Assembly (NCBI GenBank): GCA_047495785.1 | Contig: JBLDXI010000021.1 | Coordinates: 2,480,001 to 2,544,000, forward strand | From: Lepidodermella squamata | Lineage: Eukaryota; Animalia; Gastrotricha | Reading direction: 5' to 3' | Length of the DNA stretch: 64,000 bases | In this document: one piece after another, positions 34,946 to 63,314 of the stretch | How the letters are laid out: each line of letters begins with the position of its first letter | How positions within the stretch are numbered: the stretch's first letter is position 1 | Program-made: the position numbers and the translations under genes | The notes under the pieces: generated by a model | What the model saw: only the letters and a program-made list of their open reading frames with translations | What the model was told of the DNA's origin: nothing | Databases searched by the model: none

Positions 34946-35749
34946 AGTTAGTAGTAAAACGCCCAAGAAAACATAACACGCCAATTAAAAACATTACATA
35001 ATATCGTAAGCTATGCAAAAGCAGCATCGGATGCATGTAGAAGCACACGGCTGGTGATTTCAAGCGGGATCATTTGTTAGCTATTATGATGATTGAAAGT
35101 TTGTTCAATAGAGTTCTTTCAACTGTAACAGAATTGAAAAATGCGGCTAAACACATGATTTTTTAATGACACGCAAGCGCTTTGTCATTGTGAATACAGA
35201 ATAATATGATATCGCACGAGTCGGCATCTCACAAACTGCACTGATGAGCACACTTGGGCGTTAAACGAGAAGAACTTGAAGAAAACGTTCGAAGACAAGA
35301 TACATGCACACCAGGCTTGTTTGTTTTTCCCCAGACGACAGCGACAAATTAAAAATCAAATTAAATAGTGCACAACCCCATGGCGAGACGATTTCGAGTC
35401 ATAGCTCGCTATTTTAGGCCCAATAAACTACAATAAAATACACGGAGCATGCATGCAGTTTACTCACACGACGATGCTGTAGTTCGACCTGATCAATCAA
35501 GAGTTGTTTATAGCAATGGCGAATCATCCTCCACTTGTCAATAAGATACTTTGTTATTTCTTCAGCTTGCGACGGCGACATACAAATGATAATTCGTAGT
35601 ATGAATACGTGTTATAAACTCTTCAATCTTTAGCTCGGTATATAGAAACTGCGTCGAGTTGTTTAGAATAGTTTCGGAAATTACAATTAAGTTGCAATAA
35701 TATTAAATAATCATATAATAATAGATTTAGTCAGTTCGTTCTTGCTAGC

Positions 35750-38700
35750 TCAGCCGTACAGCATTCCGCTTCCTCCGCCAGGATACATTTGGGCGCCGGG
35801 TTGCGGCATGTAACCGACAGGCGCGCCGCCCATCGGAGGAACGTAGCCGGCGTAGCCCGGAGGCGCCGTCAGCATCAGAGGTGCCTGGTCGAACAGTGGC
35901 GCTTGGTTCGGTTGGGCAGCGGCTTTCTGCTCTTCCTCAGAACGCGTCGACTCAGCCTGTTCAAGCCGATCGAGGCGGGTCTGGAAGTCGCGCATGACCT
36001 AAATGAAAAATAATAACTTAATGTTGTACAAAGCCCGTTTCATTCCCATGCAATCTTACCTGGATCATGTAGGGCATGGCGAAGTCTGTGAGTTGATTCT
36101 TCCATGCCAGTTCAAGGATGACGTCTGGGCGTAGCAGGTCATAGCACGCGTACAGGCAAGCTGAGAAGCAGGCAGTGTTCTTCTCCGCGACGAAATAGGC
36201 CAAAAGCTCTTCAGCGAGTTCCGCCTGCCGCGATTCGGCGGCATAGACCATGGCGTCCTTGAACAGGCGATCCTTCTTGCAAAGGTCGACCGCCAGCTTC
36301 CAGCGGTTGTTGCTCCGGTACAGGTAGGCAGCGATGCGGCGGAATTCAACGAGTTCGTGCTTTTCCAGGCGCTGCGCCAGCGAAATGGTGTCGAAGTTGT
36401 CAAAGGCATCGATGGAGGCGCGCAGACCAGCGTGGTCCTCCTCCTCGATCAGCAAGTTGTTCAGCGCTTCGTTGACCGCCTTCACGTTCAAGTTCTGGAC
36501 CTGGCGCAGGTACGGCTTCGTCATAGCAACGCGACCGGCCTTCGCTAGTTGCGCCACGGTGCGAGTATGGTCGAGGCGGGGGATGAGCACGGTGAGCAGG
36601 TCGTTCAGCAACATCGGCTTGAAATCCAGGTAGAATTGGATAGCCTTGTAGTAGAGCTCGATGTTAGCGACCTTCGTGACGAGGTCCTTGAAGTGGTTCT
36701 CTTTCCACGCCTCGGACGGGTGCTGAATCATAGTCTGCACGGCATTATCGTACTCCTCGTATTTGTCGTAAAGGAAAACGAGTTCGGCCCAGAGGTGGGC
36801 TTGCTCGGCGGCGCGCAGCACCTTTGGAATGTTGACACGGGACCAGAAAAGCTCGAGGTGCTCGCGCATCTTCTCAGGCTTGTACTTCGAATACAGAATC
36901 GCCAGTTCAGTGAACATGCCCATGTGAGCGCGTTCGAGGCCGAGGGCAGCCTCGAGCAATGCGATCAACTCGTCGAAATGGCCACGGTCCTGGTAGAAAT
37001 TGATCAGCTCCTCCAACTCGTCAGCGTGAACGACGATATGGAGACCGCAGATTTGCGCCAGGCGGAACTCTTCATGCTCGACGCAGGCAAAGCAAACCTC
37101 TTTCCACGTGCGGGTGGCATTAGCCTTGCGAGCAGCATCAACTGCGGCCTGGTACTGGCCGAGGTAGACGAGCGTGATGGCGAGACGGGCAAAGTTCGAC
37201 ACTGAGTTGTACAAAATCTTGGCGGGTTCGTACATAGTCGCGGTGAAACAGCGATCGGCGACAGCGGTGATGTTGGCATGGTTCGGGCCAGCAATGAACT
37301 CCTCGAGGTCGGCGAGGCGCCCCGTCTTGGCGTAAGCAAAAACGAGCTCCGAGTCGATGAAAGTCTCGCGAGCCTTCTTGCGCGCCATTTGCAGGTACTT
37401 GACCAAATCCTCGTAGTTGCCAGACTCGGAGGCAGCGGCGACAACCTCTTGGTAGGCAGTTGGATCAACAGCCTTGATGAACGAGTCGATAGCTTCGCGG
37501 ACCATGCCTTGCTTCAACTGGGCACGACCGAGCAGGGACCAAACTGCGGCCTCGTTGCAACGCTCGGCAAATTCGTAGGCACGATCGAGGTTTTGGATTT
37601 GCTCGATGAGCACCTGAATAGCCGATGTGTTGACTTCGAATTTTTTGAAAATGGCGAAAGCCTCTTCGTGGAGACCGTTCGAAATGGCAATGTTTGCGAT
37701 GTCAGGCGCGTCGTAGTTATCCAAGCGAGTAATGTATTCCATAACTCGAGTACGATCAGCCTTGATTGCGGTCAAAATAAGCAAGTTCTGCAGGTTGCGG
37801 TGGTCGGAGAACATCGAATTGTCGAGAACGATCTTTTCCAGCAATTCAATGAGTTCGTTAGGCAGGTCAGCCGTCATGAAAGCCTTGACAGCGCATGAAA
37901 TCTCCTCCGGGTCTTGCGTCTCCGACAAGGCAGTCTGGACGACCTGGTCGATGAGTTGGCGGCGGAATTCGTTTTCGACGCGCAGGACGAACGCCCACAT
38001 TTCAGGGCTCTTCCGACGCACCAAGTAACGAGCTTCGGTTTTGAACAAGCTGTTAGTGTTGCAAACTTCAATGAGCTCCTGGTCGCATTTTCCACGCTCG
38101 TATGCAACGCAAGCCAAGTGAGGGTCACGCTTTTCGCAGTACTTGCCGACAACGCGCGAGTCGTAGTACTGGTTTTCCTTCAAGAAACGTTCGGGATTAT
38201 TGTTCGAGTCAATGTAGATCTTGGCCAAGGCGTTGTGGACGCCTGGTTCGACAGCTCCTTCGTGGATGCGCATTTCCAGCCATGGCAGCAGCAATTTCAA
38301 ACGGTTGCGCTTCTCACACTCGGCGACAAGGTCGTCGGTCGAGAATTGGCCGCGCACCAGCATGATCAACTGCTTGATGATGTCCTCGCCACAGTCGACA
38401 TCGAGGAGGCCACCGACGACGGCAGGCAAACGCGAAGGGTTCACCTTCTGCACGTAAATCTCAATGTACTTCTGCAGACCGTTACGGAACAAATACAGCA
38501 CCAAATCGTGAACGTAGTCGAAGCGGTCGCAAACAATGATCAGCGGCAATTGATCAGTCAGCTTTGCTTCCTTCAAGAAGTTCTTGACTCGTTCAGGGTC
38601 GTATCGCTCCGACTCGCGGCAAATACGCTCGACTTCCTTCATCTGGCCTGTTCGGCACGCGGCTTGGATGTACTTGAAATGCACTTCAGAATCTTGGCTG

Positions 38701-41108
38701 AAGTTGACAATTGCGCCGAGAAACAAGTATAGACCTTCGTAGCACTTGAACGACTCGAACATGTCGACTAGGGCTTGTGTAGTCAACTGCTCGTGGTACT
38801 TGGTCGCGATCTGAACGACTGCTTGCAAGTTCTGTCGGATGTTGGCTTGCAACATAGCCTTCAAGCATTCCATCGAATCGTCGACACTAAGGGTTGAGAA
38901 ATACTTGACGAGCCACTCGATTTGGAAGAGAGGCGCGTGCACCAACGCCCGCTTGATGTCGTACAAGTCCGTGTAGTGTTCCAGAGCACGTTGGTATAGA
39001 CCAGCCTTTTCGCAGAGCTGAGCGATGAAGGCACGATCGTAGTTGGTGAACATGTTCCGAGCAAAGATGGCTTCAGCGACTTGAGGAGCGTGAATCAGGT
39101 TCATCTCAAGCAAGCGAGTCTGCAAGTGGCCCTCAGTCGGACGGTTGTTTTGCAGTGCCTCGAGCAAAAACGCGGTGCATTGGGGAACCAGAGTCAACTC
39201 CATGAAGGCATCCACGACCTGATTGATGTCAGCTAGCGGCTCAGGCAGGTCCGAGGCGACTAAGCGTTGGGCGAATTGAACACCTTGATCCGGGCTTATG
39301 CGCAGGAGCGAACGCAAAAGGTACAAATAATCCGGGCGATATCCAACCTTAATTTCAAAAACGGATTAATGTCAAAATATAACAAGGCAAACGGGAAATA
39401 CAAACCTTTTGCGAGTACATGATGATTTTGTCGAATTGTCCCGTTTCAGCAAAGCATTGAATGACCTTGGCCGGAGCCTGGGCGCGCAAGTACACAGAAA
39501 GGGCAAGAACAGCATCGAAGCCCTTGACTAGATCACCCAGTTCCTCTGAACATTCCAGCTTATCTTCCTTCAACCACTTTTCAAGTAGTTGTTTGCGTCC
39601 TTGCTGAAGAGCTGGTCGACACAGTTCGATGGATTCCCATTTGTTCAGTTTTCCGCTTTCCAACAGCAGACCGAAGTAGTTCAACAACGGGGTCGCCTGG
39701 CCTGGCTGAGTCGGCGCTTGTTGGAAGCGCTGGATGGTCTGTGGATTTCGAAGGATTCCACGAGGAGCAGTAGCTGCGACCTTTGCAGCCTCTTGATAAT
39801 TACCGGCGTTGAAAAGATCGTTGAAGCGGCGAACGAAAAGGTCATCAGCGCCCGGCAGATTGTTACGTGCCGCAAAGCGGAACGCAAGCTCAGGTTGATT
39901 TAGATTAGTTGTCAGATATGGGACAATGCTATCGTCATCAACACTAACTGACAGAACCTGGCCTTTGCGGTTGATACCGATGATGCCACCAGATGCTTCG
40001 TGGGGGCTTGTGACAAAGATAGTGTCAGCGCTAATGCGATTAGTGTACAGGCAGGTGGCTGATTCAACGTCATACAAGTGAACATATCCGTATTTGGTGA
40101 TCATGAAAATCACTCCGTGTTTCGGGCCGAATTGCATGGCCACAGGGAAGTCGTTGGTTGACTCCGGGGGAAAGAAGACGTCCACAGCCTTTTTGGAATA
40201 AGGCTGATTTCCTTGAGGAGGAGTTCCTACTTCGATAATATGCAACTTCCCGGCGCCCTGGGCATTACGCACGGCAAATGTGAACAACGTTGAGGCTTGT
40301 GGATTGCCTTCAATACGGAATTGAGCGAACGCTGCAGCATGGCCTTCGATAGGTTGCGATACCTTTCTCTCCACTGAGTACAACTGCATACTTCCAACGA
40401 CTCGGTTTTGTGGAGCTTGGATACCTTGAATAAGGATGCTAAGTTAATAAGCTAATTGATCTTTTAAAGTTTCTTACCGATCAATAAAAGCCATTGCTGA
40501 CGAATGTCTGTCCGATAATTAATGATTTGGCAGCCATTAAGGCTGGTATGCCGATCAAACATTTTCACAGGTGCCGAATCTCCCTCAAGAGACCAGTGAT
40601 ACACGGCGGTTTCAGTTACCATGCCGATGGTGTTATTAGAAATCCACTTCCAGAAGACAACATCCTCGACCATTGTATGACCCTTGAGTTTGCTTTTCTG
40701 TTCGATGTTAAAAATTTGCAAAGTTTTTCCGGCTGGAAAGTAAACGCGACATGATAGAACATGAATAAATGCCTGCTTGGGAAACTTACCATCTCCAGCG
40801 CCCTTCAGAGCGATGATTTTGTTTACAGGATTCATGATTGCAGAATCTGCGGTTATCGGCCTTCGCACGGGATTTGCCGGGTCAGCGAGGTCAACAATGA
40901 CAACCATGCTTGTGTCGCCAGCTTTTTCGCGAACACAAATGAATTTGTCGGACTCCATGGTGACAGTAGCAAATCCGATATTGGCTGCATTGACCCCGAC
41001 ATTTTGAAGCTATAAATATCAGGATGACATTAGCTTAATAACATTGATAGAACTTAGCTCCCTTACCTGTAAGTGCTCTTGAAATTTGATTGGTAATGGT
41101 TGTGACAT
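35750..41108 (-). CDS. CLTC: Clathrin heavy chain
   Basis: [14 protein letters not shown] start, [35 protein letters not shown] repeats, [10 protein letters not shown], and a Pro/Gly/Tyr tail with PLMLT; six exons. Confidence 0.99.
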
Positions 41109-46856: not shown

Positions 46857-47800
46857 TCATCGGAAGGCCTGTTTGAACAGCCGCCAAACTCCGATACGAG
46901 AAGAAGATGGCGGTGATGATTGAGAGAGGCGTGACTGACTTCTCGAACGAGATGAAGGCGCATTAGAATCAAAATTTTCGATTGAGTCGCCCGACTGTCG
47001 GCGCACAGTTTCAAAACTGGCAGAGGATGGCGATGTGGGTAGTTTTTTATTCATTCGCTTATTTCGCCACCATTCACCAAGACTGGTTGTTCTTTTGCGA
47101 TCCCGAGGTCCCTCATTTGCCCAAGATTGTTTGTCATCTGGAATAGGGACAGGATGGAGCGCTGCCACATTACTATCTACAGACTTGGATTTGCATTTAG
47201 CAACCTTGGCGTAAACATGCAGAGCACTCTGGGAGACAATGTCTGTTGTATAGCGCCTCTCCGAATAGCCACTCGCATCATTTGGTATCAGACCAGCATC
47301 ACTACTGCGCTCGAAGCCTATCAAAGATGGTGAAGTGGTAGGGCCATTATCCGAAGCTTCGGAAGAGGTTGCCCGAGAAACTTTATGCGAGTTGGACCAG
47401 TCCTGTATGATCTTTAGTATACTACTGGCGTCATCCTCCGAATTTGTTTTCAAATGAAACTCTCCCTCCCCACTGCAACTGCGTCGACTGGTGCAAAATG
47501 TGAAAACCTGTTTTTTCGTACACCCATATCGAATTATTTGGCTGAAAGACACGAAGGAAAACATGTATAAAAATTTCTCACTAGCATTAATTACTCAAAT
47601 TTCCACATCAATTTTAACTGCCAACTGTCGTCATTGGAATTGCTAGGACCTAATTTTGATCCCCTTACGAATTCTTTCAGATAGAAGCCGTCTGGTACAG
47701 CTTTAAGAATATAACGCCGCGGGATCGAGCAGTCCAAATCGCAACGAAATGCAGCTTGAGTAGGCAAGATAACTATTTCAAAACAGCTGGATGTTGTCAT
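46857..47800 (-). CDS. DOK-like adaptor with IRS-type PTB domain (copy B)
   Basis: FEIVILPTQAAFRCDL..WKF IIRYGCTKKQVFTFCTSRRSCSGEGEFHLKT; clearly paralogous to copy A; one intron. Confidence 0.75.
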
Positions 47801-48392
47801 TAATTAATTATAAATAATCTAGGAAAAAATATAACTTTTTAAAGAAACCATTTTTATAATAAACGATAAATACATGCTATGAAGACAGCAGAATTCACAT
47901 CATACTGAGTCAATAAAGATGCATAAACTACAACACGAGTTCTACAACGAATTTAACGTGCATGGCACGGACAAAAGAAAGCCTGCTCGTGGCGGAGAGT
48001 TCGCTCAACCATCGTTCGAGCGCACCGAGATACAAACTTCAACAATTTTTCTTTACAGCTGAGACTGGATATTACATCTTAAAACGTGATTGATTTGTCG
48101 CGCTAACACCATCAAACACCGAACTTTGTTCGATCAATAAAAATATTAGGTAATGTATAATGTAATAGAAGTGAATACGTCTAGTAAGTGCGCATGTGTT
48201 ATAGTGATATTGCTACCACCAATTCTTCGTCGAGTGTTGCCCATGTCGAAATATCACCAAGCTAAACCAACTAATGTCAAAACGAATAGAGAACAGGCAA
48301 GTTAATTATCATCCAAGGGTTTAAAATGAGAGAGCCCTTGAGTCTTCATCGGCATGAAAATAAGTTCGTTAATCAAATACAGATCCTTGTCA

Positions 48393-49877
48393 TCAAGTGC
48401 CAGATCCAGTTTGTTCGGTCGAGGGCATTGTGCTGAGCACACGATCCAGCCATTGAAGCGGACCATTTAGGTGAATCTCCACCCAACAATGACAATCGGT
48501 AATGCGCTGTCGCCGATATTCGGCACCCCAGCCCTTGGCAAAGCTCATCCTTATCGAACAAGCGCTAGCGACGTTGTAAACCGCTCGGTAGCCTTGATGG
48601 ACGGCTTGATTGAGCGTTTTGGCGAACTCGGTATTGCTGAAAATATTCAGATGGTTTCCGGGTGGGATTTTAACAACGGTCAGCGGGTGCCAGCCGAAGC
48701 GTTGGTTACAGTTTAAGGATTGAACCCAAATCGCGCACTGAGAAAGGCACTCGACATGAACCTCACCGCCGATGTACCAAAGCCGCACACCCTTGCCGAT
48801 ATGACGACGCGTATCGTCCACCTTAGCTGAGCGTTCCGGGTTTGAGAAGTGACCTAAGCATAATCGGTCACTGCTGCAAGGGTCGACATATCCATCGATG
48901 GTGATAGCCCGAGGTCTTCCACTAAAAGTTCCGACTTGCTTCCCCAATTCATAATAAATAATCTGGCACCAATAAGTTGGCTCAATAAAATCCACGGCCT
49001 GCATGTTAGCTGGTCCATGGCCAGGGGGAGGCATCATCGCCATATCTAAGCCGTTTTGTTGTTGCTGCTGCTGTTGAGCGTCGGCTGCACCCGTGCTAGT
49101 TTCCATTTTCATGGACATATTTCCAGCCAAGGCCATCGAAGTGACGTCGTCAAATATCATCATGCCGTTGGATTCGATTGAAAAATCAATTTTATCATCC
49201 ATAAGTACGTCGGGTTGAATGCTAGGTATCAAATCTAAAGACAAGCAAAACAGTTGAAACATTCTTAATTCAAACTAATCATTTACTTGACAACGAATTG
49301 GTAGACTGGTCAGTAGCACGAGCGCTTGAATGCAGTTCGAGTGAAGCAGCGTTGGCGATTTTCGGCACGAACACCGGGGGTAGTCTTGGAGACATTACTT
49401 TGTCGTAATGAAAAGGGTTGATGCAAATAAGAGGCGATTGGTTGGTGGGAACGTTCGGATTCCCGCTCTGACCGGCGGAAACTTCACAGGTCTGCGCTGG
49501 CCGCAGTTCGTGAATAGTTTGAAGCATAGGCCACCTCCAGAACTGACAGCTGATCAACTGTGAATGCAAAATCGATATACAGGCTTGTCGCGTAAAAATT
49601 AACAACAAACTTGTGGTGGAGTCGGGTTGCCGTTACCATCTGATAACGTCTGGTCTTGCGCCAAGATGCTGGGAATCGTAACGCATTTCGAATTCGGGTT
49701 CTCTTCGACTATTGCACGCTCCAAATCATCAATAGCGCTATGCTTTGTGAGGTGCTTTATAATGGTCTTAATTGCACGCTCTTGCCACTCGGCATTGCTA
49801 GCCGACTCCCCAGGTCTCTTCATTTCCAGCAGCTTTTTCGACTTGTTGGGTTGAAAGATATTGTCAAACAAAGGCAT
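48393..49877 (-). CDS. Divergent R-Smad (copy A), MH1 + MH2
   Basis: [63 protein letters not shown]; ends TGSGT*. Confidence 0.92.
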
Positions 49878-50162
49878 GGTCAATTTCGTAATTTAATAAA
49901 AGACTAAAGCGAATAACAAAGCTATTGATTGCGTACCTCCCGCTTTTATGGCAAAGTAAGAACAATCAGGCCAATCAATGACATCACGGGTATCAAGAAC
50001 GTCATAACTTATTAGATCGCTTCTGAGAAAAATGTCTAAACGTTACTTAAAACTTCAATATCGGTGATAAAAGATTACAATACGCTGCGTCTGAATTAGC
50101 CCAATAAAATTTCACCGAAGCACGGGTAAGGTCTTGAGTATCTTGCTCGACACCGGTTCGTT

Positions 50163-51921
50163 TCAAGACATCGATGGACATGGACCGGCAGAATTTCCCA
50201 TTGCACGTAAAACTCTATCAAGCCATTGGAACGGGCCTGTAAATTAAAGATAAATTAAACAAAATGCATTCGGCTTTGACGCGGACAGACCGTTCAAGTG
50301 GATTTCAGTCCAACAATCACACTCAGTTACGCGTTGCCGTTTGTAGTCAGCACCCCAGCCTTTGGCAAAACTGAGCCGGATGCTGCACGCACCGGTCGAA
50401 AATCTATAAACTTCGTCGTAACCGCGATGAACAGCTTGCTCCAGTGATTTAGCAAACTCTCGGTTCGAAAATATATTCAGATGGCAGCCCGGAGGTACTT
50501 TGACAACAGCATTCGGATCCCATCCGAATCTTTGGTTGCAATTTAATGACTGAAGCCAAATTGGAAACTGAGAGAGGCATTCTACGTAAACTTCACCGCC
50601 AATATACCACAGCTTGACACCACGACCAATGCTCTGTCTTGTCTGCTCAACATGAGGAGTTCGCTCAGGATTAGAGAAATGGCCGAGACAGAGTCTATCA
50701 CTGGACGCGGGATCGACGTAGCCGTCGATAGTTATAGCGCGAGCTTTTGCGTCAAATGCTCCGACCTGATACATATCGAAAACAGAAAGTCATATTGTAT
50801 AAATCAGCTGGTAGGACTTGCAACGCCTTTTATCTAACTAGCTTAAATTACATGATAATTGGATCTTAAGATGAATATTTTGCAACACGGAATTTATCAA
50901 TTTGGAAGAGTTTGTCGCACGAAAAGCTATCAGTTTTTTATGGCGATTTTTTACAAAGAAAGCATTGAGGGATGGTTCAAAGCTTTCTTTGTTAACGGTC
51001 CAAATTGATGATTACTCATTCAATCGAATTTCAATCGATACTTACGAATAAGTATCATGGAGATTTTTACATGCTAAAATGGAATAGCAATCTTGCGGTC
51101 GAATATCATTTGTAAGAGTTGTACGATGGGTTGAGAGTGGACATCGTTCTCTAAATAAAGCTGCTCACCTGTCGACCAAGTTCATAATAAATAACGCGAC
51201 ACCAGTATTCAGGTTCTTGAAAGACGATCGGTTGGACCTCAGATGTTGGCTCCATTTTTACCATTCCAACTGATGCTTGCATACCGGGAAAATGATTAGC
51301 CGCTCCTTGGTTAGATTCCATCAACATGGATGCATAATTGTCACCATTCCACCCAGGAAAGTCAACATTTGATGCAGGAGTGGAAGGCATTTCTAGATGA
51401 TAACGGGATATACCAAAGTCCACAGTAGATGTCATATCCATGCCGTTGGAATTCCCAGGGTTGAAGTTTTGGCGAGGCACAATAATTGGCGGTAAACTAG
51501 GAGATTCGATGCGTTCATAATGAAAAGGATTTACGCATATCAATTCCTTATCGAGAAGATAATTATATGGGCAATTTCGTTGCGCTCTCAGTTCATGAAT
51601 AGACTGCAAGCTTGGCCATCGCCAAAACTGGCAAGCAATGACCGGTGGAGGATACAATACTCCGTTGTATTCCAGGGCGGGGTCTACGATTGTAGATCGA
51701 GGAATAGTAATACAATGACTATTCACATTCTCATCACAAACAGCTTTTTCTAAATCCTCAGCGGAGCTGCCTTTGGAAAGATGTTTAATGATGAAACGCA
51801 CAGCTTTCTCTTGCCACTCCAATTGGATGGAAGCATTCCATGAAGCATTAACATCTACCGGCTTTCGCAGTTCCAGCAAACGCTTTCCTTTAGGTTGGAA
51901 AATGCTGTCAAACAAAGGCAT
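50163..51921 (-). CDS. Divergent R-Smad (copy B), MH1 + MH2
   Basis: [43 protein letters not shown]; spliced last exon GPFQWLDRVLRAMGNSAGPCPSMS*. Confidence 0.92.
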
Positions 51922-53735
51922 AACTGTCTATAAACGGAAAACAGGTAAGGTATAAGAGCATTCGCTATAAAAATTCCGAACATGCTATAGGTAGTAAAAA
52001 CAAAATCAGGAAGACATAAGTTTCAAACCTCATTAGCGTTCTAAAAGAGTGATCAATCTTGCATCATTTTGCCTGATTCGTCATTTAAGCAGCATTTACA
52101 CTCATCGATGTTAACGTCTAGCCAAGCTTCTAGACAGCACATGTTTGCCACAAAAACCCAGTTTGGACCAGATTTTTGGCGATGTCACCCATCGCGTGCC
52201 AGTCTGGAGTCAGATGACAAACTCTCCAAGTCCCAAACATGATGCCAAATATAAGGGCCGAAAGGAGCAGAGAAATCGGTGAAGGTTGTCTGCAAAAATG
52301 CTCTAATTTTAATCTGATTTTTCGTGTGATTTCGAATTTTTACTATTCTGATATTGTTACGTAATACGTAATATGTCGATTACAGCACACTCCGTTTTTT
52401 CGGTCGAACCAAGCTGCAAAAATCTGCTACACCCTCGACAACGATAACTGCGTGTGTTTATTGATGCATTTGCATTTACGGATTCCACTTGTTGCTTTTT
52501 GGTAAATCGATAACGCGGTATCTGCTATATGTCGTCCACCCTTCCCATCCCCTGAGCGCTCTCAGCGTTTTTCAGCTGGATCACCTCGTACTTGTTTTAA
52601 ATGTCTTACGTCTTCTCTCCGCAACTGGTTCATATTGTGATTGCTTGCAAGTAATCCTGCATACTGAAGAATATACTATCATGTGGCTATGTGGCGTTTG
52701 ATGCTGAGAAGCAAAAGCATATCCAACATCACATTCTCGCGGTCAAATCCGTGGGGTAAAATTGACCTTTTATTTTTTGGTTTGGTTTTATAGCAGAGTT
52801 TAAACAATCCAAACTCGTCTTAAATGTTAAGGCAAAAGCCTTTTTCTATCCTGTTAATGTCTCAACCAGAGGCTAAGACGTCGTAAAAACCATCGAACAT
52901 CGACCCTTTGCTCTTAAGTATCGATATATTGAAACGTCTCATTATGAAACCAAAGTTGAGTTACTTGAGACGTGAAGCTGTGGCTGGAGATTTTCTGGAG
53001 TCAGGCTTAAAAGGGGAATATTTCTAGGTCGCGTGGTTCACAGTCATGCGCTATGTACCTCCTTCCTGAGTGAATTATTACGCAAAATTGATTACCTATG
53101 TCCTGTACTTGCTAGGGTGTGCGGAGGTGGGTGAAGGGCGAAGTCGCGTTTTTTGCTTGCCTTCTCGAAAACCCGAAAGGATATGGACTATTGACGACGC
53201 ATTATACCATCTTTTTTGACTTCCTGCATCTTGTAACTTTCCTTGCGTCAACCGACTAGAGACTTCGAACTAACATTTCTTGAGCACCGTTCAGCTCACA
53301 TTTTCTTAAAAATCTTCCTAATTCCTACCTTTTCCGCTTTTTCTGTTGTACTACTCATCATAGCTATGGCTTGAACACGTTGTAAACTCTTTAAAATGTA
53401 AATTTTTTCCTTTCCGCCGAATTCCCATTTGGTTTTGAGAGTGTCCCCATTGTTGCCCATACCTGTCGTGTTTTTATCATGCGAAACATGAGAAAAGATG
53501 CTTCAGCGTAATTATTGCTCGGAAAACGCTAGACCACTAGCCATCAGGATGCATGCTCGTGTGACTATGGTTCCTCGGAATTCTGGCCTGAGATGATATC
53601 TTAGGAGCAATACATTTTGTTGGCGTTAGAGTGTACACTTTCTCTATTTCAGAATGCAGAATTATTTTGAACTTCATGTTTTTAGTTCATTTTCAAATAA
53701 TTATTTTATCTGATCTTCCTTACGAATTCCACGAT

Positions 53736-56079
53736 ATGGCTGCAGAAATAGCTCAAACACATCTAGAATCTAAATCTGAGGTATGTTTCATTATGCTCAT
53801 TTGCATTTTTTCTACCGCGGGCCCAACTGTTTAGAGCGAACGAATGGAGGCGATCAAGGAATTACTTTCTAACTTCAAGTTGAACGATAACAGTGAATCG
53901 GGTAGCACTCGTCCAGGACTGTTGGAGATTGGCCAGCGCATGAATGCACAAATCGAACAGGGCCTATGCAAAGATGGCCAGGCCAACGCGGACATCAAAA
54001 TGTACCCTACATTTGTGGAAAGTCTACCTACGGGAAAAGGTGGGTAATTTTTCATTCCCTTTGGTATTGTTAAGCAGAGGATTGGTTTGCATACTCGGTA
54101 ATCTGCGCGATTTCGACTTGTTTATTATGCAGTATAACGATAAAATTTATTTGATACCCTCCTCGCGCTGTCGATGATGCGGGTAAACTCTGCGCTTGAC
54201 TGCTTTTGAAGCGCTATGGCCTGAATTCAGTTGCACTAAAAGTATCGTTCTACTAATTTTCAATTTCGCATTCCAAAAGCATTTGAGGGTAGGGACTCAG
54301 TTTGAGTGTGAAAGATGTTCCATGCAAAGCAAATCAGTGAGGAATCGTTGCTGGTTGCAGTTTGCTATATTCAAGATCATTATTAACCCCCCAAGGAATC
54401 GAGAAATTTGACTAAAACTGACCTATTCAGTATATTAAAAATGGATTGAAACGAGAAATATTATAAATGAGTGGCTTTTATAGCCGAATTTTTGATCATG
54501 GGGAAATAAGTCACAACAATAATTTATGGTTATGACAAATATCTTGTTATTTTAGAAACTGGAGAATATTTAGCACTTGACCTGGGCGGTACATGGTTCC
54601 GCGTCCTGTTTTTCCGCTTGAATGGTCATGGTGGCATCGAATTTGCAGCAACTCCTCACGTTCAAGCGATCCCAAAAACAATCATGCTAGGACATGGCTC
54701 ACAGTTCTTCGATTTTATCGTGTTCGCGATAGACACGCTCATCACTCGGCTTATTAATGAAGGTCAGGTCAGCATTGACGTTGACGGCAAACGAGATTTT
54801 CCACTGGGATTCACCTTTTCCTTCCCGTGCCGCCAAGTTGCGATTGACAGTGCCATTCTAACAAAGTGGACTAAGGGATTCGCATGTGAAGGTGTCCCTG
54901 GGAAAGACGTTGTCGCGCTATTGCACGAAGCGCGTGACCGAAAGAAAGACATGAAATTCACCTTCCACTGCGCCTGCCTCATCAATGACACGGTCGGTTG
55001 CTTGACCTCCCTTGCGATGTCTCGCCCAGACACGCGTGTTGGTGTCATTTTCGGAACTGGTACTAACGCATGTTACCCGGAGCGCATCGAGCGCATCGGC
55101 ACCATTCCTGAATCGTACGCATCGAAAGACAAATCTGGCGGCGTCATGCTAATAAACACCGAATGGGGCGCTTTCGGAAGCATATCAAAGTGTTTGGCGG
55201 ACGTTCGAAACTGTTACGATGAACAATTGGACCGCGAATCGCTGAATAAAGGCGAACAATTGTATGAAAAAATGATCAGCGGCATGTATATGGGCGAAAT
55301 TCTACGTCTGCTTCTCGTCGACTTGGTCAAACTAGGCCTCCTTCTTCCCGACGTACACGACCACGAAGCTCTTTCCCGGTCGGACTTATTTCAACGCAAC
55401 CAATTGCACACTAAATACTTATCTGAAATCGAAAAGTAAGCAAACTTTGGGATTTCCTCTTCCCTTAGCTTCAATTTGTTGTTCACTGGTGAATAGCGCT
55501 TACCTCTGTTGGTAGGTGTTAACACTGCTGATTTTGTGTGTTTTTGGCTGTGTATTTGGTTATATGGTGGAGGAATCTATTTAATTACATACTTTCTTCT
55601 TTCTCATCTCGAAGATATCACGCGAAATTTATTTTCTAGTGACCCCATGCCTCGCCATCCTGCGCGTAACATGATGGGCGAACTTGGCGTTGACGAAATG
55701 CTCGTATCAGACGCAGACTGCGACATCATCCACGCTGCATGCGAAGCAGTTTCAGGCCGCGCTGCGAACTTGGCTGCTGTAGGCCTTGCTACAGTTCTGA
55801 AGCGCATTGACCCTCCTAGCAGTGGTATGTTCAATGCTTTTGGATTTCCTCGCCGTGAAATAAAATGTATTTTCTTCTCCAGGCGTAATCGTGGTTGGCG
55901 TCGACGGTTCTTTAGTCCGTTTCCACCGTCATTTCCGTCAGGTTTTAGAATCGAAAACTCGTGAGCTGCTCGATGCTGTTAACTGCCAACACGTTCACTT
56001 CAAAATCGAACTCAGCGAGGATGGTTCAGGACTTGGAACAGCCGCTGTTGCCGCCGCCGCTGCTCCTAAACGGTCTTGA
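53736..56079 (+). CDS. Hexokinase (single ~50-kDa domain)
   Basis: KMYPTFV, ALDLGGTWFRV, LGFTFSFPC, KWTKGF, INDTVG, GTGTNACY, INTEWGAFG, EKMISGMYMGE, GVDGS, SEDGSGLG; five exons. Confidence 0.96.
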
Positions 56080-58445
56080 TGTCGAGGACGCCTTGTCTTA
56101 ACAGTCTGCGTGCCAGTATTGTATATCCACCGTGCGCACCATCATTTTGATAGTTGAATAAGCTGTTGACTTACTCTCGCTGTGCCTTGCCACTTTCCCT
56201 GTTCATCAATTCGTCGCCACTCATTCTACCATCCTGGCCGTTGAACTCCGTCGATCAATCAATCAGCTGACTACAATCGTCGCTCAACGGTCGTTAACCC
56301 CTGAGTTTGGTATTTCGTTGCGGAGGCTAGTCGACTGCTGCTTAGGAATAACTGCCATTTGATCTAAATAAGAGCGCGGTACGACAAAGGTGCGACACGC
56401 CCTGCTGTTAAGGCGTCTTTTTCTTGTCTTCGTCCATCTTTTCTTCAATGTTGGCTGGGCCATATTCACGGGTTCCTAGCCTCGAAATAATTTGTGTCGC
56501 TCGGCATCAACCGTCACTCTTAGGAATCTTTACCAGATATCTTCAACTAGATTCTGTGGTAGTTAAATATATTAAGCTGTTACAATTGAAGCACTTTGCC
56601 GGTGACTGGCGGTGACTAATACCACAATAAACCCGAGTTGTTTTAAGCCTGTTTTACAATTAATGGTTTTGTGGTAATGATTAATAATGAGCATTTCGTC
56701 TGTGTTATATATCGCGCTCTCTTTTAATCGTTTGTTTCTACCGTGATGCTAAATCGTGTTTGTTTTAATTCTTACGAATGGTTTTGGCAACCTTCATCCT
56801 CTTTCACTTCATGCTACCTTAAGTATGAAAATAGAGAGTTATTCTCTGCATTTACTCATTTGGAATTATTGTAGATTTGATTTCGGCATTTATTTGGCTC
56901 CGCTGCTATTACTTTTCTCAGCTATTTTTCACGAGTTAGTGTTGTCTGACTGATCTTCTCCAATTAGTTTCTTCTGTTCGGCGCCTAGCGCTTGATTGCA
57001 TGCTTTTAGCGATGTTTAGCCATTGATTGACCCGCTTCGCTGAGAATGGATATTTGATGGAGAATCGTGAAGATCATGGCTTATTCATGCCAGCGAGCAA
57101 GCACAATCCAGCATTTATGTTCAAACGAGTAATGCAAATTGTAATATATTTACCCGAAATGATGGTGTAATTGATAATAAACCTGTAAAATGTTCGTCTT
57201 GATTTTTGATGGAATATAATTTTTAACAAATCGTTTCAACTGACGGAAAAAGAAATTATAATTTATTATTATGAGATATTAACAGGAAGTTGTTCAACTT
57301 GTGAGCGACTTCCGGTGATAGCTTTGGCTATGATTTTTGAACGTTCTTACTTCTCTGTCATTATATTGCGAATGTATTGAAGATGAACTAAATTTTATAC
57401 AAAGAAGTTCATACTACTTCAATCTTCGTGCACTAATCGGTCTGAATGGTTCTGAGGTAGCCATAAGATGTGGCCAAAACACTTTGCCCCGTTACCCGTT
57501 CCCTTTTCTCATTATTTGTGAACTCGGTTAGCAATCCATTGGAAAGAAGTGTTATGGTCATATCTGAGTTGTGTTTGATATAATTTATGAGTCTCTCGAT
57601 ACTCCTTCTATGCCAGCCATTGTAATCAATAATCAGCGTTTCTGCTTGTATTATCCATATCCTTGAATGCAGTGTGAATAGAAATTGATTTACAATTTAC
57701 AGATTAATGTGTTAAAATCTATGATGTTTGAATCATAGTGCACTTACCCGGCATTTTTCGAGTATACAACACGATTAGTTGGAAACAGAATAAAAGACAA
57801 TATTTGTTCTCCTGCTCCGTGTCCTGCATGTGCTCACGTCACTTGGCATAGTTGCTTAGCGTGGGCGAAGTCACTTGTACATACAACCAGTAGTTATTAG
57901 TTATTTTTTCAGCCGCTATGGTTGCTGTCGTAGTGATCTCAATTTTCACAAAAAATCTCGGTCCACGTTTGAGACTTTGACCTATCGATTTTCGCAATTA
58001 TCATCATCCACGTATAGCTTTACATAGCTCCTGTGGTTGGTAGCAATGAGGCATAGTTGAAAAACATGATAGCCCTGCGCATGTCGGCTAGCGGATGACC
58101 AGAGCCCTGTCTGTAACAATAATGTGATAATTAAAAGATGATTTTTTCGTGCTCTCAAGGCCTAAAGCAAATGTAAAAGTCTACTGTCTACTTTGCCAAC
58201 ACTTCACAGCATTCGTACAGAAGTTCTGTTCTCCGAGAAATTTGCCGAAAATGTATATTTTTCCACAATTCCTTATTTTTAAGGGTCTGTCGAATGTAGT
58301 AGCTGGCGCAGATAGAATCAAAACTATTTGAAAGAATAATAATCCAAAATTTCAGATTTGAAAAAATTGATGAAAATTGCCGCCTGGTATTGGGCTACAT
58401 ATCGAATTGGCCAAGCTACTCGACCTATATTTTTGAGGACAATTC

Positions 58446-59718
58446 TATATTTGTATGATATAACATGAGTAGGAATCTATATTTGAGTGAAGCACGAAAT
58501 ATAGATCGAGTAAAACGAATGAAACGAGTGAAATCGAGGCGGAACGAGCCGGCAGGCGAGTGGAGACGAGATTTCACGAGGTGAATGAGTTTTACGAGAT
58601 CTATACGAGTGCTTCACGAAAATATAGGTTTCTACGAATGTTGTATCGTAAAATATTACACGTGTCTATATTTTTCGCAACGCAGAAGTATTAAAAAATA
58701 AAAAATCCAACTTAAAATTTCCCCTAAAAATGGCTTTATTCTCATTCTCGCTCATTTTTTCTCATTCGTTCGAATTTCGTCTCGTTTTGAAAGTCGATTT
58801 TCTGTCCGAACGGAATTCTGCTCGAATTTCCCGAACAAATGCTCCCAGAATTCTGCTCCGATTGGCAAAGCTGCCGCAATTGAAGCCGAATGGTTCGATA
58901 ACCCATCAACCCTGAAACCTGGTTCCTTCGAAATCAACGTTCGCGAAAACCATGCGCCTTTACAACCGAAGAAACTGGTTCGATTTGAACGACACGTTTG
59001 GTTGCGATGGAAGAAAGTCGACAGCAGTCCGTCGGAATTTCATCTCTGGATGTTGAAAATGGCTCAATTTCAGACTAGCGCGTCGCAACGGTGTTTGGTA
59101 CGTCGATGTTTTCAGCGTGATCGAATCGGAACTGTCGCTGGCAGAGTACTTCAAGTTCAATCAAGTTTCACGGTGGTGATTTCTGCGAATTGGGGTCAAA
59201 ATGCTGTCCGATTTTCTGGATTTTCTGCTCAGTGTTCGCGGCGCGTTCTATCGATCTAAGGAGACGACTTGCTGACCGTACCTGTTCGATGATCTTCTGC
59301 GCGATCCGACCCACTAATCGCTGCGAATTCATGCACAGCGGGGACGAAATGCTGCTCGATTTTCCGGAGTTTTCTGAGAAATCCTGGTTCCTACGGCCAA
59401 TATTTGCAGCCCGCCTGCCATGCTGTCCCCGTCTAAATTATTCTCAAAATTGAATTTCCCCATTTTCTTTCATAATAAATTGCGTTGCGAAAACTATATC
59501 CCTGTGTTTTTCCGTTAGACAGGCTTGGAAATGGGCATTTATATTCAAAATATAGATTTTCCAGGTCAAAAATATAGATAAACCTGAATCTATATTTCAG
59601 ATATAGATCAGAAATATAGTTCATATTCAAATCTATATTTGAAGTATGAAAAACTATAGATTTGTGTTTCAAGGTTAAAAATATAGACACAGTGTTATAT
59701 TTGTATGATATAACATGA
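58446..59718 (+). mobile_element. Non-autonomous element with a GA-mismatch hairpin and split terminal repeats (Crypton-like?)
   Basis: 23-bp direct repeat TATATTTGTATGATATAACATGA at 58446-58468 and 59696-59718. Hairpin 58447-58656. Perfect 14-bp inverted repeat 58662-58675/59677-59690. Many AATATAGA/TCTATATT motifs. No long ORF. Family assignment is inference. Confidence 0.7.
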
Positions 59719-60099
59719 CCCAGACTGGCACGGCGAAAGGGGACAACGGTGAACAAACGGGGGTGAACAAAGGGGCGAAATCGATTATTTCACCGTTGTT
59801 CAGCGGACACCCCTGTTCTCCGTTATTCACCGCTGATGACCAATTTTTTTTATGTTATTGTTATTTGTGCAAAGTTTTTTTTAGCTAATCCGTTGTTCCT
59901 CATTGTTCGCCTGTCGTCTGTCGAGTGAACAACGATGAACACGCCAGTCGTCACATCACTCATGAACACCAACGAACAAATTGTTCACGCTTGTCCTCTG
60001 TTTTCTCATCTAAACGGCAAAATGTTCGCCGTTGTTCACCGCGTTTTCGTGCCAAAACTCACTGTTCATCGTTGTTCTCCTATGCCGCGCCGGTCTGGG
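59719..60099. mobile_element. MITE with CCCAG..CTGGG termini
   Basis: TIRs CCCAGACTGGCACGGC / GCCGCGCCGGTCTGGG (14/16 match); internal GTGAACAA / TTGTTCAC repeats. Confidence 0.75.
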
Positions 60100-61583
60100 A
60101 AGCCGGGGGTATCGGTTTTTCTGGCGGAATTTCATGCCTGGTATAAATTTCTTCCAAACATGCCAGCTCAACTGAATTCGATGCCCTCTTTTGCGCGTCA
60201 ATCCGGCAAAAAATACTGCCATTTGAAAAAGTTAGCAATTTTTTACCTCGGCGCTCACCTGCGAAGAAGTGCAACCATTCTTCTTCAACGAATTCGTTTC
60301 TCATGTTTTATGTGTCGTTTTAAAGACAAGACTCAGGGCTATCTCCTGCCTTTTGAACAGTATTTCTTTCTACCAGGGTTGTGGAGAAACTCGCGCTCGA
60401 AGCCAAAAGTGTCCGAAATTAGCCTGTCCGAAAAAGGACTGCGTTACAGTATAGCTCATTTTCATTTTTGTCATTTCTATCAACGTCATCCACGCCATTT
60501 ACGGCATTTTCACGGGCTGCAAACCCGGCACTGTGTTGTGGCTCCGCAGTGACATCAACCGAGGGAGTACAGACTTGAGACATGCTATTATTACCTTCAC
60601 TCGCCGGCATTACATCAATAATAGGCGTGACCGTCGTCATCCTAATCACGGGCTTGTTTGGGTCAACAGCCTCACGTGAAACCAGGCTGCTGAGAGAACG
60701 GAAAGAGGAGAAAGAAGAAAGAAGCATCTCGGAATTCGAAAACCTCAGTACACAGCCATTTTCGCGCACTTCTTCGGCTGGCAATCTTCAAGATCCACAG
60801 TAAAGTTGGCTGGTCTAGGTCGCGAACAATTGGTGAATTGGTGAATGAACGATGAATGAAAATGCAACGCACTGCGAAAAATTAGTTTTATTCAAATCGA
60901 AGACGAACTGCGTAAAAAACAACACTCATGACTGATAAAATCGCGGGCGTCAACAACGTTTGCTCAACAAAGATTAACCAACATAATGATTTTGACAAAA
61001 GTTTCAATGCAAATTCATATGAAACAGGCAATATGAGGCCTGTAAGCTACAAGTTCTATGCGGGTGAAAACACGCGTGCAAAATTCAAGAAACATCTAGA
61101 CAGGACAACGTATCAAATTTATCGATAGGTACCCACACACAATGAAAACTTATAAAATGAATTAATGAATTTGAACGACGATATAATTCCGTGAAATATA
61201 ATATTGATTATTCCTAAGTAATGATGTACATCATCAAGGCAAGTCGGTAGAAAATAAATGATAGAAAACAGTAGAAAAATGAACAATATGCGACAATCTT
61301 GTCGGCATTATACTGAAGTCATTCAACATGGCAAACTTCGCACTGTTAGGCATGATACTGAATACAAATCATCATTAACGTCCACTACCATACATGGCAA
61401 GTGTCTACAACGAATTTTAGTTATTTCTATTGGCAGTAAAAATCCTCCTTATCATTATTTTGAGACATTGCAGGCGATGAAAGACTGAGGCGTCTATAGG
61501 ACATTCAAAGCGGGGCGATTCGGTAGAAGCCTCGCTCAAAGGTAACAGATTACCGCATCGAGCAAGAAACGTTCATGAGAGCT

Positions 61584-63314
61584 CTACACCGTAGCTTTGA
61601 TATCGTGCGAAGCTGAATTATGCATAGCATCGCTTGGAGTATACTCGTAGGCGTACTCGCTGCTGTAGGTGGCACTGTATGGGGGCGGGCTGTCAAGATC
61701 CTGCGGCAGCGATGAATAACAATTTTCGACTATGTTATTGGATAGCATAAGCGCAGGTGATGATACAGAATTGGACAGTGGCTTCTCAATTACGGGAGAG
61801 TTACATTCTGAATCTCCATGAGGCCCTTGAATTCCTGAAAAATTCCACATAATTCTCAAATCTCCACGAAGATATGACATGAAGACCAGCGGAATCAAAG
61901 TGAATGGAACCAAATAGAGTAACGCCGGTTGAGCCGATCGAAAGACTTCACTGCAGATCGTTGCCGTGATTAGACCTAGAAAGTACCCCATAATCGTACA
62001 TCGGAAGTATGTCAATCTGCTATTGCTGACGTAGACAGGCCCAGTAATTAGCGTGACTTCTTGAGAGCCTTTGCTTGTAAGTTGTTGTTTTCTTTTGAAA
62101 GCATCATATCGAAGAACAAAGCAAAGTAGAAGACCTGGAACAACAATATCACCCAATCTGAAATAAAGTAATAAATTAATATATTTAGCCTCATTAAGGC
62201 AAAAAATTACCCCAGCATGGTATAGCGCCCACTTTGCCAGCTGGGAAATACGAGCTTTCCTGGCAGAGACAACTTGGTGGCGCCAACAGCGCCATTGCCC
62301 GGTGAACTTATGAAATGTTGATGCGCAGAAATGTGCTCATAATTGTGTTGAGGAACTTGAGATGGCCCACTCGAACGAACAACAAATTGCGGCTCTCGAG
62401 CTAATGGTGCTGAAGTTGACGCGGCAGATCCGAATGATGAGACTAAAACTGCCAACGGGGAATCCACTGTTCGTGTAGCAACGCGTACCATTACATTCGT
62501 TTGGAACAAATATGAGGAGAAGAAAACCCAGAAAATGTCGTATAAAAGTAGACCAACAAGAAGGAGAGTTGAAACTTTCAGAGATGGCAATCGAACAAGC
62601 GCTATAAAAGCCACACATAATCCCATTGCTAGTAAATCCATTAATAGCCAATGCCCAGTAACAAGCCAAAGAGATACTAGCGTTGCTCCGCCGACTGCCG
62701 CAGCAATTTCTGATGGTTGATAGCGCCCAAAACAAAGTACCGAGCCAGTCGCTCGATGGTACGAGGCTGAGCAAGGTGCCATAAGAGCTTGGCATAATGG
62801 TAAAAGTAAGAAAGCAAATGCCGCTGTCGCAAGTACACATGTCGCGATGACAAAAATTAGCTGAAGGCTCTCGAAATACAAAAACATGACCAATAAAGAC
62901 ACAGAAGCAGCTAGTGGCATCAGGGCAGCCTATGGTCAAAAGTGGGTTCATCAGCAGCAAATTTTAAAATTGAAGCATTACCTGCCATGAGCCCAAAATG
63001 TGCCATGTGCACCAAGGCGGTGGGTTGTTTTGCCTGAGGTTACGACTGCGATCGTTGGGACAGTCTGAACGGCCATGTTGCGAATCAAGGTTTAACGAGC
63101 TACAAAACAAGTCAATCATTTTCAAAAAGAAAATCCAACAAATATTGAATACCGAAAGCTTCCATAAACAATGAGTGCGACAGAAACAGCGTATGTTGCC
63201 AGTCTAGACGTGTCGAATGCTGAATAGGGGCTAAAAATGAAAGTATTGCTGCTTTACACGACAAATGATATTAACTAATAACAAACAGTAACGACACTGG
63301 CTCGCCGGCTCCAT
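61584..63314 (-). CDS. SPPL3: Signal peptide peptidase-like 3 (GxGD intramembrane aspartyl protease)
   Basis: LIVYGSFRSLN, RLPSLKVSTLLLVGLLLYDIFWVF (YD), KLSLPGKLVFP, MLGLGDIVVPG (GxGD, across an intron), QPALLYLVP. Start codon tentative. Confidence 0.93.

What the first reader, a model, noticed from the sequence alone, without database searches (positions are those of the whole stretch)
58447..58656. 210-nt strand-specific hairpin punctuated by ~10 tandem GA/GA mismatches
Arms pair as AACAT/ATGTT, GTAGGAATC/GGTTTCTAC, TATATTT/AAATATA, GTGAAGCAC/GTGCTTCAC, TATAGATC/GATCTATA, GTAAAAC/GTTTTAC, GTGAAATC/GATTTCAC and GCC/GGC around a GGCA loop. Nearly every break is GA opposite GA (once GGA/GGA), and most other mismatches are G.T. 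Sheared tandem G.A pairs are stable in folded single strands, while the complement would have TC/TC. So it is not a decayed palindrome: it looks selected to fold on the + strand only. Inference: an ssDNA recognition structure, analogous to integron attC sites or HUH/rolling-circle origins.
Basis: partly seen in the sequence, partly recalled or inferred. Interest (0 to 1): 0.85.

Follow-up and report, generated by a model that had tools for sequence, protein, structure and literature searches.

The report
Purine-punctuated one-strand hairpin repeat
A 230-base hairpin in an invertebrate genome has nearly all its stem breaks made of G and A on one strand, so only that strand folds well; it looks like a non-coding repeat built to fold as single-stranded RNA or DNA, but what it does could not be determined.

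Summary
Window 58447-58656, extendable to 58438-58666, is one long hairpin of 77-81 base pairs around a GGCA loop. It has seven pure 2x2 GA/GA loops and four purine-only variants. On the + strand, 50 of 52 internal-loop bases are purines, and every pure GA/GA step sits between a pyrimidine and a purine. All four non-Watson-Crick stem pairs are G-T. As RNA the + strand folds at -94.8 kcal/mol and the - strand at -62.2; as DNA the values are -43.0 and -32.2. Inverting duplex DNA cannot put GA on the same strand in both arms, so a strand-specific constraint is the simplest reading. The window is animal DNA, and no recombinase, Rep or transposase ORF lies in its 64 kb. RNA is at least as likely as ssDNA. 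The hairpin lies in a 1.3-kb non-coding block of nested repeats, which also holds a truncated second copy of its left end. It is absent downstream of the same gene in an uncultured relative. No further copies could be reached, so GA/GA conservation remains untested. My best reading is a non-autonomous foldback-type repeat that folds on one strand only.

The parts
58438..58666 (+). Whole hairpin: left arm 58438-58550, GGCA loop 58551-58554, right arm 58555-58666. The finding's 58447-58656 is its well-paired core.
   Evidence: (I1, I2).
58467..58547 (+). Left-arm series of purine steps. Pure GA at 58467, 58485, 58508, 58517, 58526, 58536 and 58546; variants at 58496-99, 58521-24, 58539 and 58541-43. 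Start-to-start spacing is 18, 11, 12, 9, 9, 10, 10 nt.
   Evidence: per-loop energies.
58558..58637 (+). Right-arm partners of the purine steps. Pure GA at 58558, 58568, 58578, 58587, 58596, 58618 and 58636; variants at 58562-64, 58566, 58581-84 and 58606-08. GA is on the same strand as in the left arm.
59677..59718 (+). Truncated second copy of the hairpin's left end. Its inner 23 nt are identical to 58446-58468, including the first GA. Its outer 14 nt are the exact complement of 58662-58675, just past the right end. It is cut off at 59718 where a different foldback begins.
   Evidence: (D1, I17).
58425..58675 (.). Left cluster of six copies of an 8-10-nt A+T-rich motif (core CTATATTT or its complement). 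Four copies lie inside the hairpin arms and one on each flank.
   Evidence: 12 of the window's 16 copies lie in 58425-59690.
59548..59690 (.). Right cluster of six copies of the same motif, in both orientations, just upstream of the truncated second copy.
58658..58720 (+). Left arm of a 63-nt, 70%-matching inverted repeat. It starts inside the hairpin's right end.
   Evidence: (I3).
59446..59507 (-). Right arm of the same 63-nt inverted repeat. Together the two arms bracket about 725 bp of non-coding DNA.
   Evidence: (I3).

Best explanation
The hairpin belongs to a small non-coding repeat family of the foldback or MITE-like kind, and it has been shaped to fold as a single strand on the + strand only. 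Stems of 7-9 bp (one of 16) are separated, about once per helical turn, by tandem G-A/A-G steps in a pyrimidine-GA-purine setting. These are the cheapest possible interruptions of a helix in the folded + strand. On the complementary strand they become TC/TC, which costs energy. In the duplex they cut the palindrome into short pieces. The result is a rod that is stable on one strand, carries a regular row of non-Watson-Crick purine steps along it, has a poorly folding partner strand, and has a duplex form that is a weak cruciform former. I infer that the rod is a handle for a protein, read either on a transcript or on a single-stranded DNA intermediate of the repeat's own copying. Shown: the structure, its strand bias, its repeat context and its lack of coding capacity. 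Inferred: selection for folding, mobility, protein recognition and the kind of nucleic acid.
For: Structure and strand bias. GA/GA ties for the most stabilising of the 100 non-canonical 2x2 loops with these closing pairs (-0.7 kcal/mol), against +1.4 for UC/UC. All four non-Watson-Crick stem pairs are G-T on the + strand and none is A-C. Repeat nature: a second, truncated copy of the left end lies 1.24 kb away, identical over 23 nt and with GA on the same strand. The short A+T-rich motif clusters here, and there are nested inverted repeats. No ORF scanned in the block matches a Pfam family at a significant score. A different foldback element sits directly beside it. An uncultured relative keeps the upstream gene order (PTB/IRS, two Smads, hexokinase) but shows no similar hairpin and no detectable similarity downstream of hexokinase. 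That fits a lineage-specific insertion better than a conserved host gene.
Against: Only one full copy and one 42-nt fragment were seen, so mobility and family size are unproven. There is no clean target-site duplication: the 9-nt direct repeat at 58426-58434 and 58667-75 is offset by 3 nt on the left, and the right-hand copy lies inside a longer repeat. An ordinary foldback does not explain the purine steps: the neighbouring foldback at 59719-60109 folds equally on both strands and has unbiased loops (28 of 73 purines). The relative is distant (hexokinase 76% amino-acid identity) and its downstream gene differs, so absence there is weak evidence. There are no expression data and no protein partner.
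Confidence: 0.4

Rival explanations
1. It is a stand-alone host gene for a structured non-coding RNA. The transcript would be a rod-like hairpin whose regular purine-purine steps serve as protein-binding sites, and whose interruptions keep any perfect duplex run at 16 bp or less.
For: The RNA model gives the largest strand gap (-94.8 against -62.2 kcal/mol). Each CGAG/CGAG loop is stabilising in RNA. G-U but no A-C pairs is the usual mark of RNA-level constraint. A run of five T lies just after the stem (58671-58675). The folding strand is the sense strand of the upstream hexokinase gene.
Against: There is no Rfam family at gathering score, and only noise at E of 2 or more. The hairpin was not found downstream of hexokinase in the relative. 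A second truncated copy and a repeat-rich setting suit a repeat better than a gene. A run of four T inside the right arm (58590-58593) would be awkward for a polymerase III transcript. The five-T run is itself part of the repeated A+T motif.
Confidence: 0.25
2. This is the first reader's view: a site recognised as folded single-stranded DNA by a tyrosine recombinase or an HUH (rolling-circle) enzyme, as with integron attC sites, IS200/IS605 ends, Helitron ends or Rep origins.
For: Folding is strand-specific. Tandem G-A pairs in a pyrimidine-GA-purine setting are known to be stable in DNA; that rests on established biophysics from my own knowledge, not on a test here. A short motif repeated 12 times around the hairpin could act like iterated binding sites.
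Against: No recombinase, Rep/HUH or helicase domain occurs in any ORF of 150 aa or more in the 64 kb, or in the small ORFs scanned nearby. At 210-230 nt with eleven symmetric loops, it is unlike the short hairpins with extrahelical bases that these enzymes use. The DNA energy model shows only a modest strand gap of 10.8 kcal/mol, although that model has no special term for GA/GA.
Confidence: 0.12
3. It is a functionless by-product. A short array of a purine-rich unit of about 10 nt (GAG, six variable bases, C) was partly inverted, and the GA is simply the conserved part of the repeat unit.
For: The arms can be read as about 13 units of 9-12 nt that start with GAG or GAA. Tandem Repeats Finder sees 2.3 copies of a 9-mer at 58513-58533. 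Two opposed unit pairs (58519-58525/58580-58586 and 58538-58545/58560-58567) look like direct rather than inverted copies.
Against: Inverting duplex DNA turns GA into TC, so it cannot leave GA on the same strand in both arms. Reaching the present state from an inverted copy would need paired transversions at about ten junctions, while 77 stem pairs show only four changes, all of them G-T. The nested order of perfectly complementary cores is far beyond chance (z = -15).
Confidence: 0.08
4. It is an artefact of assembly or sequencing, a vector or adapter remnant, or a chance palindrome.
For: Palindromes can arise in amplified libraries. Only one full copy is seen.
Against: Artefactual palindromes are perfect inverted copies, not GA-punctuated ones. 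There is no match in 72,556 plasmid records. The left end recurs 1.24 kb away in a different context. Chance is excluded by the shuffles.
Confidence: 0.02

Closest known systems
Foldback and MITE-like non-autonomous transposable elements of animals
   Same: It is small and non-coding, consists almost entirely of two inverted arms, carries short repeated motifs inside the arms, and sits among other repeats. A typical example lies right next to it at 59719-60109.
   Different: Ordinary foldbacks are symmetric in the duplex: mismatches are unbiased and both strands fold alike (control). Here every break is purine against purine on one strand. No clear target-site duplication was seen and no copy-number evidence was obtained.
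Integron attC sites and IS200/IS605-type transposon ends (bacterial sites read as folded single-stranded DNA)
   Same: Both are imperfect palindromes whose imperfections carry the information and make one strand the functional one.
   Different: Those are bacterial, 60-140 nt or shorter, marked by extrahelical bases and an unpaired spacer, and linked to a recombinase or HUH gene. This one is in an animal chromosome, is 230 nt long, has symmetric 2x2 purine loops, and has no such gene in 64 kb.
Purine-rich strands of centromeric satellites that form hairpins held by tandem sheared G-A pairs (known from biophysical work; cited from my own knowledge)
   Same: The building block is the same: G-A/A-G steps in a pyrimidine-GA-purine setting, and one GGA/GGA step, stabilising a fold of only one strand.
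   Different: Those are long homogeneous tandem arrays of 5-12-nt units that pair with themselves. This is a single nested palindrome with distinct Watson-Crick stems between the purine steps.
Kink-turn and box C/D RNAs (tandem sheared G-A pairs read by L7Ae-family proteins)
   Same: Tandem G-A/A-G pairs act as a protein-recognition feature in a folded RNA.
   Different: A kink-turn needs an asymmetric three-base bulge beside the G-A pairs, and here the loops are symmetric. Rfam box C/D models score far below threshold (21 bits against a gathering score of 50).
Hairpin-RNA and microRNA precursor loci
   Same: Both are a long inverted repeat in intergenic DNA that would give a stable RNA hairpin.
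   Different: Those have long near-perfect duplexes that are cut into small RNAs. Here the duplex is broken every 7-9 bp (the longest run is 16 bp), and no Rfam family matches.
Terminal hairpins of linear single-stranded DNA viruses (compared in concept only; nothing fetched or compared)
   Same: Both are long hairpins with deliberate mismatched bubbles that work in single-stranded DNA.
   Different: There are no replication-protein or capsid ORFs anywhere in the window, the hairpin is not at the end of a gene-bearing unit, and the second copy has the same rather than the inverted orientation.

Membership tests
Integron attC site | Imperfect palindrome of about 57-141 nt with extrahelical bases and an unpaired central spacer on the recombined strand | tested here: not met
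   It is 210-230 nt long, has eleven symmetric or near-symmetric purine loops and only one single-base bulge.
Integron attC site | Lies in a cassette array next to an integron-integrase (tyrosine recombinase) gene in a bacterium | tested here: not met
   The window carries animal genes (clathrin heavy chain, Smads, hexokinase, SPPL3). No integrase domain occurs in any ORF of 150 aa or more. There is one hairpin in 64 kb.
HUH / rolling-circle origin or transposon end (Rep origins, IS200/IS605, Helitron) | An HUH Rep or transposase gene in the same element | tested here: not met
   No such Pfam domain occurs in the ORFs of 150 aa or more across the window or in the small ORFs scanned within 58.7-61.5 kb. 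A distant autonomous partner elsewhere in the genome cannot be excluded.
HUH / rolling-circle origin or transposon end (Rep origins, IS200/IS605, Helitron) | A short hairpin that presents or adjoins a conserved cleavage motif | not testable with these tools
The hairpin is much longer than those described.
HUH / rolling-circle origin or transposon end (Rep origins, IS200/IS605, Helitron) | Iterated binding sites flanking the hairpin | tested here: inconclusive
   Twelve copies of an 8-10-nt A+T-rich motif lie within 58425-59690, but no protein is known to bind them.
Foldback / MITE-like element | Terminal inverted repeats, small size and no coding capacity | tested here: met
   The arms 58438-58550 and 58555-58666 pair over their whole length. 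Only ORFs of 50 aa or fewer overlap the hairpin. The one searched, the 50-aa ORF, found only spurious satellite translations.
Foldback / MITE-like element | Target-site duplication at the ends | tested here: inconclusive
   A 9-nt direct repeat occurs at 58426-58434 and 58667-58675. It is offset by 3 nt on the left, and the right-hand copy is part of a longer repeat.
Foldback / MITE-like element | Many dispersed copies in the genome | tested here: inconclusive
   One full copy and one 42-nt end fragment occur in 64 kb. The source genome is not in any searchable collection.
Hairpin-RNA / microRNA precursor | Match to a curated RNA family | tested here: not met
   No Rfam hit reaches gathering score in the window, and only E of 2 or more around the hairpin.
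Hairpin-RNA / microRNA precursor | Transcription and processing into small RNAs | not testable with these tools
   No expression data are available.
Kink-turn / box C/D RNA | Tandem G-A pairs flanked by an asymmetric three-base bulge, plus box motifs | tested here: not met
   The loops are symmetric 2x2. The best box C/D model scores 21 bits against a gathering score of 50.
Purine-strand satellite hairpin | A long homogeneous tandem array of a short purine-rich unit | tested here: not met
   Tandem Repeats Finder reports only 2.3 copies of a 9-mer inside the hairpin. The stems are distinct sequences in nested order.

The most novel reading that the evidence does not exclude
This is a previously undescribed kind of single-strand recognition element in an animal genome. 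It would be a rod in which sheared tandem G-A steps, placed about once per helical turn, form a periodic ladder read by a multimerising protein. It would belong to a mobile or selfish element that is copied through a single-stranded DNA or RNA form. The purine steps would also make the two strands unequal and keep the duplex palindrome from being unstable.
Probability: 0.2. Interest if true: 0.8.

Novelty: new variant of a known kind. Interest (0 to 1): 0.55.

Why it matters
Imperfect palindromes whose imperfections encode strand choice are well understood in bacteria, in integron attC sites and IS200/IS605 ends. They are hardly known in animal chromosomes. If a family of copies keeps this regular ladder of G-A/A-G steps, that would be a clear natural case of selection on a non-Watson-Crick motif across a long helix. 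It would also give a sequence signature for finding elements or RNAs that work as one folded strand: purine-only loops, a pyrimidine-GA-purine setting and a period of about 10 nt. If it turns out to be a lone locus, it is a curiosity of one invertebrate genome.

Tried and rejected
Searches for more copies:
- Exact-pattern scans of JGI metagenome contigs with the 23-nt end motif and a 24-nt core gave 0 hits.
- The same approach on GTDB genome contigs gave 0 hits.
- An exhaustive HMMER search with the hairpin's 50-aa ORF gave three hits, all translations of unrelated satellites.
- Sensitive blastn of 58300-60200 against the whole window, and of 56000-61600 against the relative's loci, found nothing beyond what is reported.

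Identifying the source species:
- I searched the SPPL3, clathrin and hexokinase exons one at a time by reference and did not join them.
- Named hits reach only about 50% (SPPL3, hexokinase) or 80% (clathrin) identity. A mermithid nematode is among the best named hits for hexokinase and SPPL3.
- The closest sequences belong to an uncultured relative in ENA metagenomes.
- An exact look-up of ten window ORFs found none in the collection. A paper search for the sample accession found nothing.

Other negatives:
- Rfam at gathering and at E of 10 or less gave nothing usable. No tRNA genes were found.
- Four literature searches on tandem or sheared G-A pairs in repeats returned nothing relevant. One paper opened used 'sheared' in another sense.
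- Strand difference in folding energy alone proved not to be distinctive.
- The 1403-bp tandem array in the same window holds no comparable hairpin.

Rejected readings: decayed palindrome, coding sequence (only a 39-aa ORF, and the period is not a multiple of three) and vector or adapter.

A slip: while reasoning I recalled from memory a few short consensus motifs of known RNAs, transposon ends and rolling-circle origins. I stopped, gave none of them to any tool, and use none here.

Full report
What is there. The window is chromosomal DNA of an invertebrate animal and not human. Pfam places these genes in it: an FF-domain protein, a Sushi-domain protein, a RabGAP, clathrin heavy chain (36018-40958, - strand), HPF1, a PTB/IRS protein, two Smads, hexokinase (54618-56079, +) and SPPL3 (61584-62920, -). 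Introns are about 50-60 nt. I searched the exons one at a time by reference and did not join them. Named relatives reach only about 50% identity for SPPL3 and hexokinase and about 80% for clathrin. A mermithid nematode is among the best named hits for hexokinase and SPPL3. An uncultured relative in ENA metagenomes is closer, at 93% for clathrin and 76% for hexokinase. The hairpin lies in the 5.5-kb gap between the convergent hexokinase and SPPL3 genes.

The observation. The minimum-free-energy structure of 58447-58656 is a single hairpin of 77 pairs around a GGCA loop. Its interruptions are:
- seven pure 2x2 GA/GA loops;
- GAAA/CGA, GAAA/GTGA, G/A and GGA/GGA;
- one bulged G.
On the + strand 50 of 52 loop bases are purines. 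Each pure GA/GA loop is closed by a pyrimidine on its 5' side and a purine on its 3' side, five of the seven as CGAG on one or both arms. The four non-Watson-Crick stem pairs are all G-T, which would be A-C mismatches on the other strand. The steps recur every 9-12 nt, once at 18, which is roughly one per helical turn. Four more pairs extend the stem to 58438-58666.

Strand asymmetry. As RNA the + strand folds at -94.8 kcal/mol (z = -15.1) and the - strand at -62.2. As DNA the values are -43.0 and -32.2. In the RNA parameters each CGAG/CGAG loop contributes -0.7 kcal/mol, against +1.4 for CUCG/CUCG. GA/GA ties for the best of all 100 non-canonical 2x2 loops with these closing pairs. The DNA parameter set has no special term for GA/GA (1.3 against 1.7), so it understates the gap. 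That such steps are stable in DNA is established biophysics cited from my own knowledge, not a result obtained here. The energy difference alone is not unique in the window (3.8 SD; one other window reaches 31.5). The distinctive feature is the loop pattern. A dedicated scan found no other hairpin with two or more tandem GA/GA or TC/TC steps in the window or in the relative's loci. A neighbouring ordinary foldback serves as a control: it folds equally on both strands and has unbiased loops.

Why it is not a decayed or neutral palindrome. Inverting duplex DNA turns GA into TC. Holding GA on the same strand in both arms at about ten junctions, while 77 stem pairs carry only four changes (all G-T), requires a constraint that acts on one strand. 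The arms can also be read as about 13 units of 9-12 nt beginning GAG or GAA. Two opposed unit pairs look direct rather than inverted. This does not remove the need for a strand-specific constraint.

Context. The hairpin sits in a 1.3-kb non-coding block (58417-59718).
- Twelve of the window's sixteen copies of an 8-nt A+T-rich motif lie here, in two clusters. Four of them are inside the hairpin arms.
- A 63-nt inverted repeat (58658-58720 and 59446-59507) starts inside the hairpin's right end.
- At 59677-59718 there is a second copy of the hairpin's left end. Its inner 23 nt are identical, including the first GA on the same strand.
- The outer 14 nt of that second copy are the exact complement of the sequence just beyond the hairpin's right end. 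The ancestral stem was therefore probably about 20 nt longer.
- This copy stops abruptly at 59718, where an unrelated 390-bp foldback begins.
- No ORF in the block scores significantly against Pfam. Only ORFs of 50 aa or fewer overlap the hairpin.
- The relative keeps the gene order PTB/IRS, Smad, Smad, hexokinase. The 2.4 kb after its hexokinase shows no similar hairpin and no detectable similarity, and the next gene differs.

Interpretation. The structure and its one-strand bias are shown. That the bias was selected is a strong inference. Everything about function is weaker. My best reading (0.4) is a member of a small non-coding foldback-type repeat family that is built to fold on the + strand. 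The purine steps would serve three ends:
- they cost nothing in the folded strand;
- they disable the complementary strand;
- they break the duplex palindrome into pieces of 16 bp or less.
The regular row of purine steps is a plausible protein-binding ladder. Whether the folded strand is a transcript or a single-stranded DNA intermediate cannot be decided here.

The main rival (0.25) is a host gene for a structured RNA. In its favour are the G-U-only wobbles, the RNA energies and a five-T run just after the stem. Against it are the second truncated copy, the repeat setting, a four-T run inside the right arm, the lack of any Rfam match and the absence from the relative.

No recombinase, HUH or helicase domain occurs in the 64 kb. 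The anatomy also differs from attC and IS200/IS605 hairpins.

Limits. No further copies could be reached. The JGI metagenome and GTDB genome scans gave nothing. The source species is absent from the protein collections. The one exhaustive protein search returned only spurious satellite translations. The decisive test, conservation of GA/GA and covariation among copies, therefore remains open.

Steps left out, and a slip. I did not scan the viral contig collection with the hairpin's sequence. The host is an animal, so any hit would have fetched a virus of animals, which is barred by any road; this is listed under referred steps. I also slipped in my reasoning by recalling from memory a few short consensus motifs of known RNAs, transposon ends and rolling-circle origins. 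I stopped, passed none to any tool, and none appears in this report.

Verdict. This is a real and statistically striking strand-specific hairpin. It is best filed as an unusual variant of a foldback-type repeat or structured-RNA locus, not as an attC or HUH site. Interest is moderate until a family of copies or a transcript is shown.

Noticed in passing
window 29328-34950: Four head-to-tail copies of a 1403-bp unit that are almost identical (9 differences in 4220 compared positions), 39% G+C, with no ORF of 80 aa or more. They are unrelated to the hairpin. This could be a recent amplification or an assembly effect.
   Followed up: partly
window 59719-60109: A 390-bp foldback element with terminal inverted repeats and many copies of a TGAACA/TGTTCA motif in both arms. 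It folds equally on both strands. It abuts and truncates the second copy of the hairpin's left end.
   Followed up: partly
window 4186-4239: A short near-perfect hairpin with a stem of about 18-22 bp and a 10-nt loop, resembling a microRNA precursor. It has no Rfam match.
   Followed up: no
window 46857-56079 and L002-L005: The gene order PTB/IRS protein, two tandem Smad genes, hexokinase is shared with an uncultured relative found in four ENA metagenome assemblies. The gene after hexokinase differs: SPPL3 here, AP-3 subunits and a cullin there.
   Followed up: partly
window 58417-58432 versus 58497-58512: The left flank holds a true reverse complement (with TC, 15 of 16 matching) of one left-arm module. 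The structural partner of that module in the right arm carries GA instead. Both the duplex-inverted form and the purine-corrected form of the same module therefore exist side by side.
   Followed up: partly
window 24520-24573: Another short perfect-stem hairpin turned up in the palindrome scan (score 14, 8-nt loop). I did not examine it.
   Followed up: no
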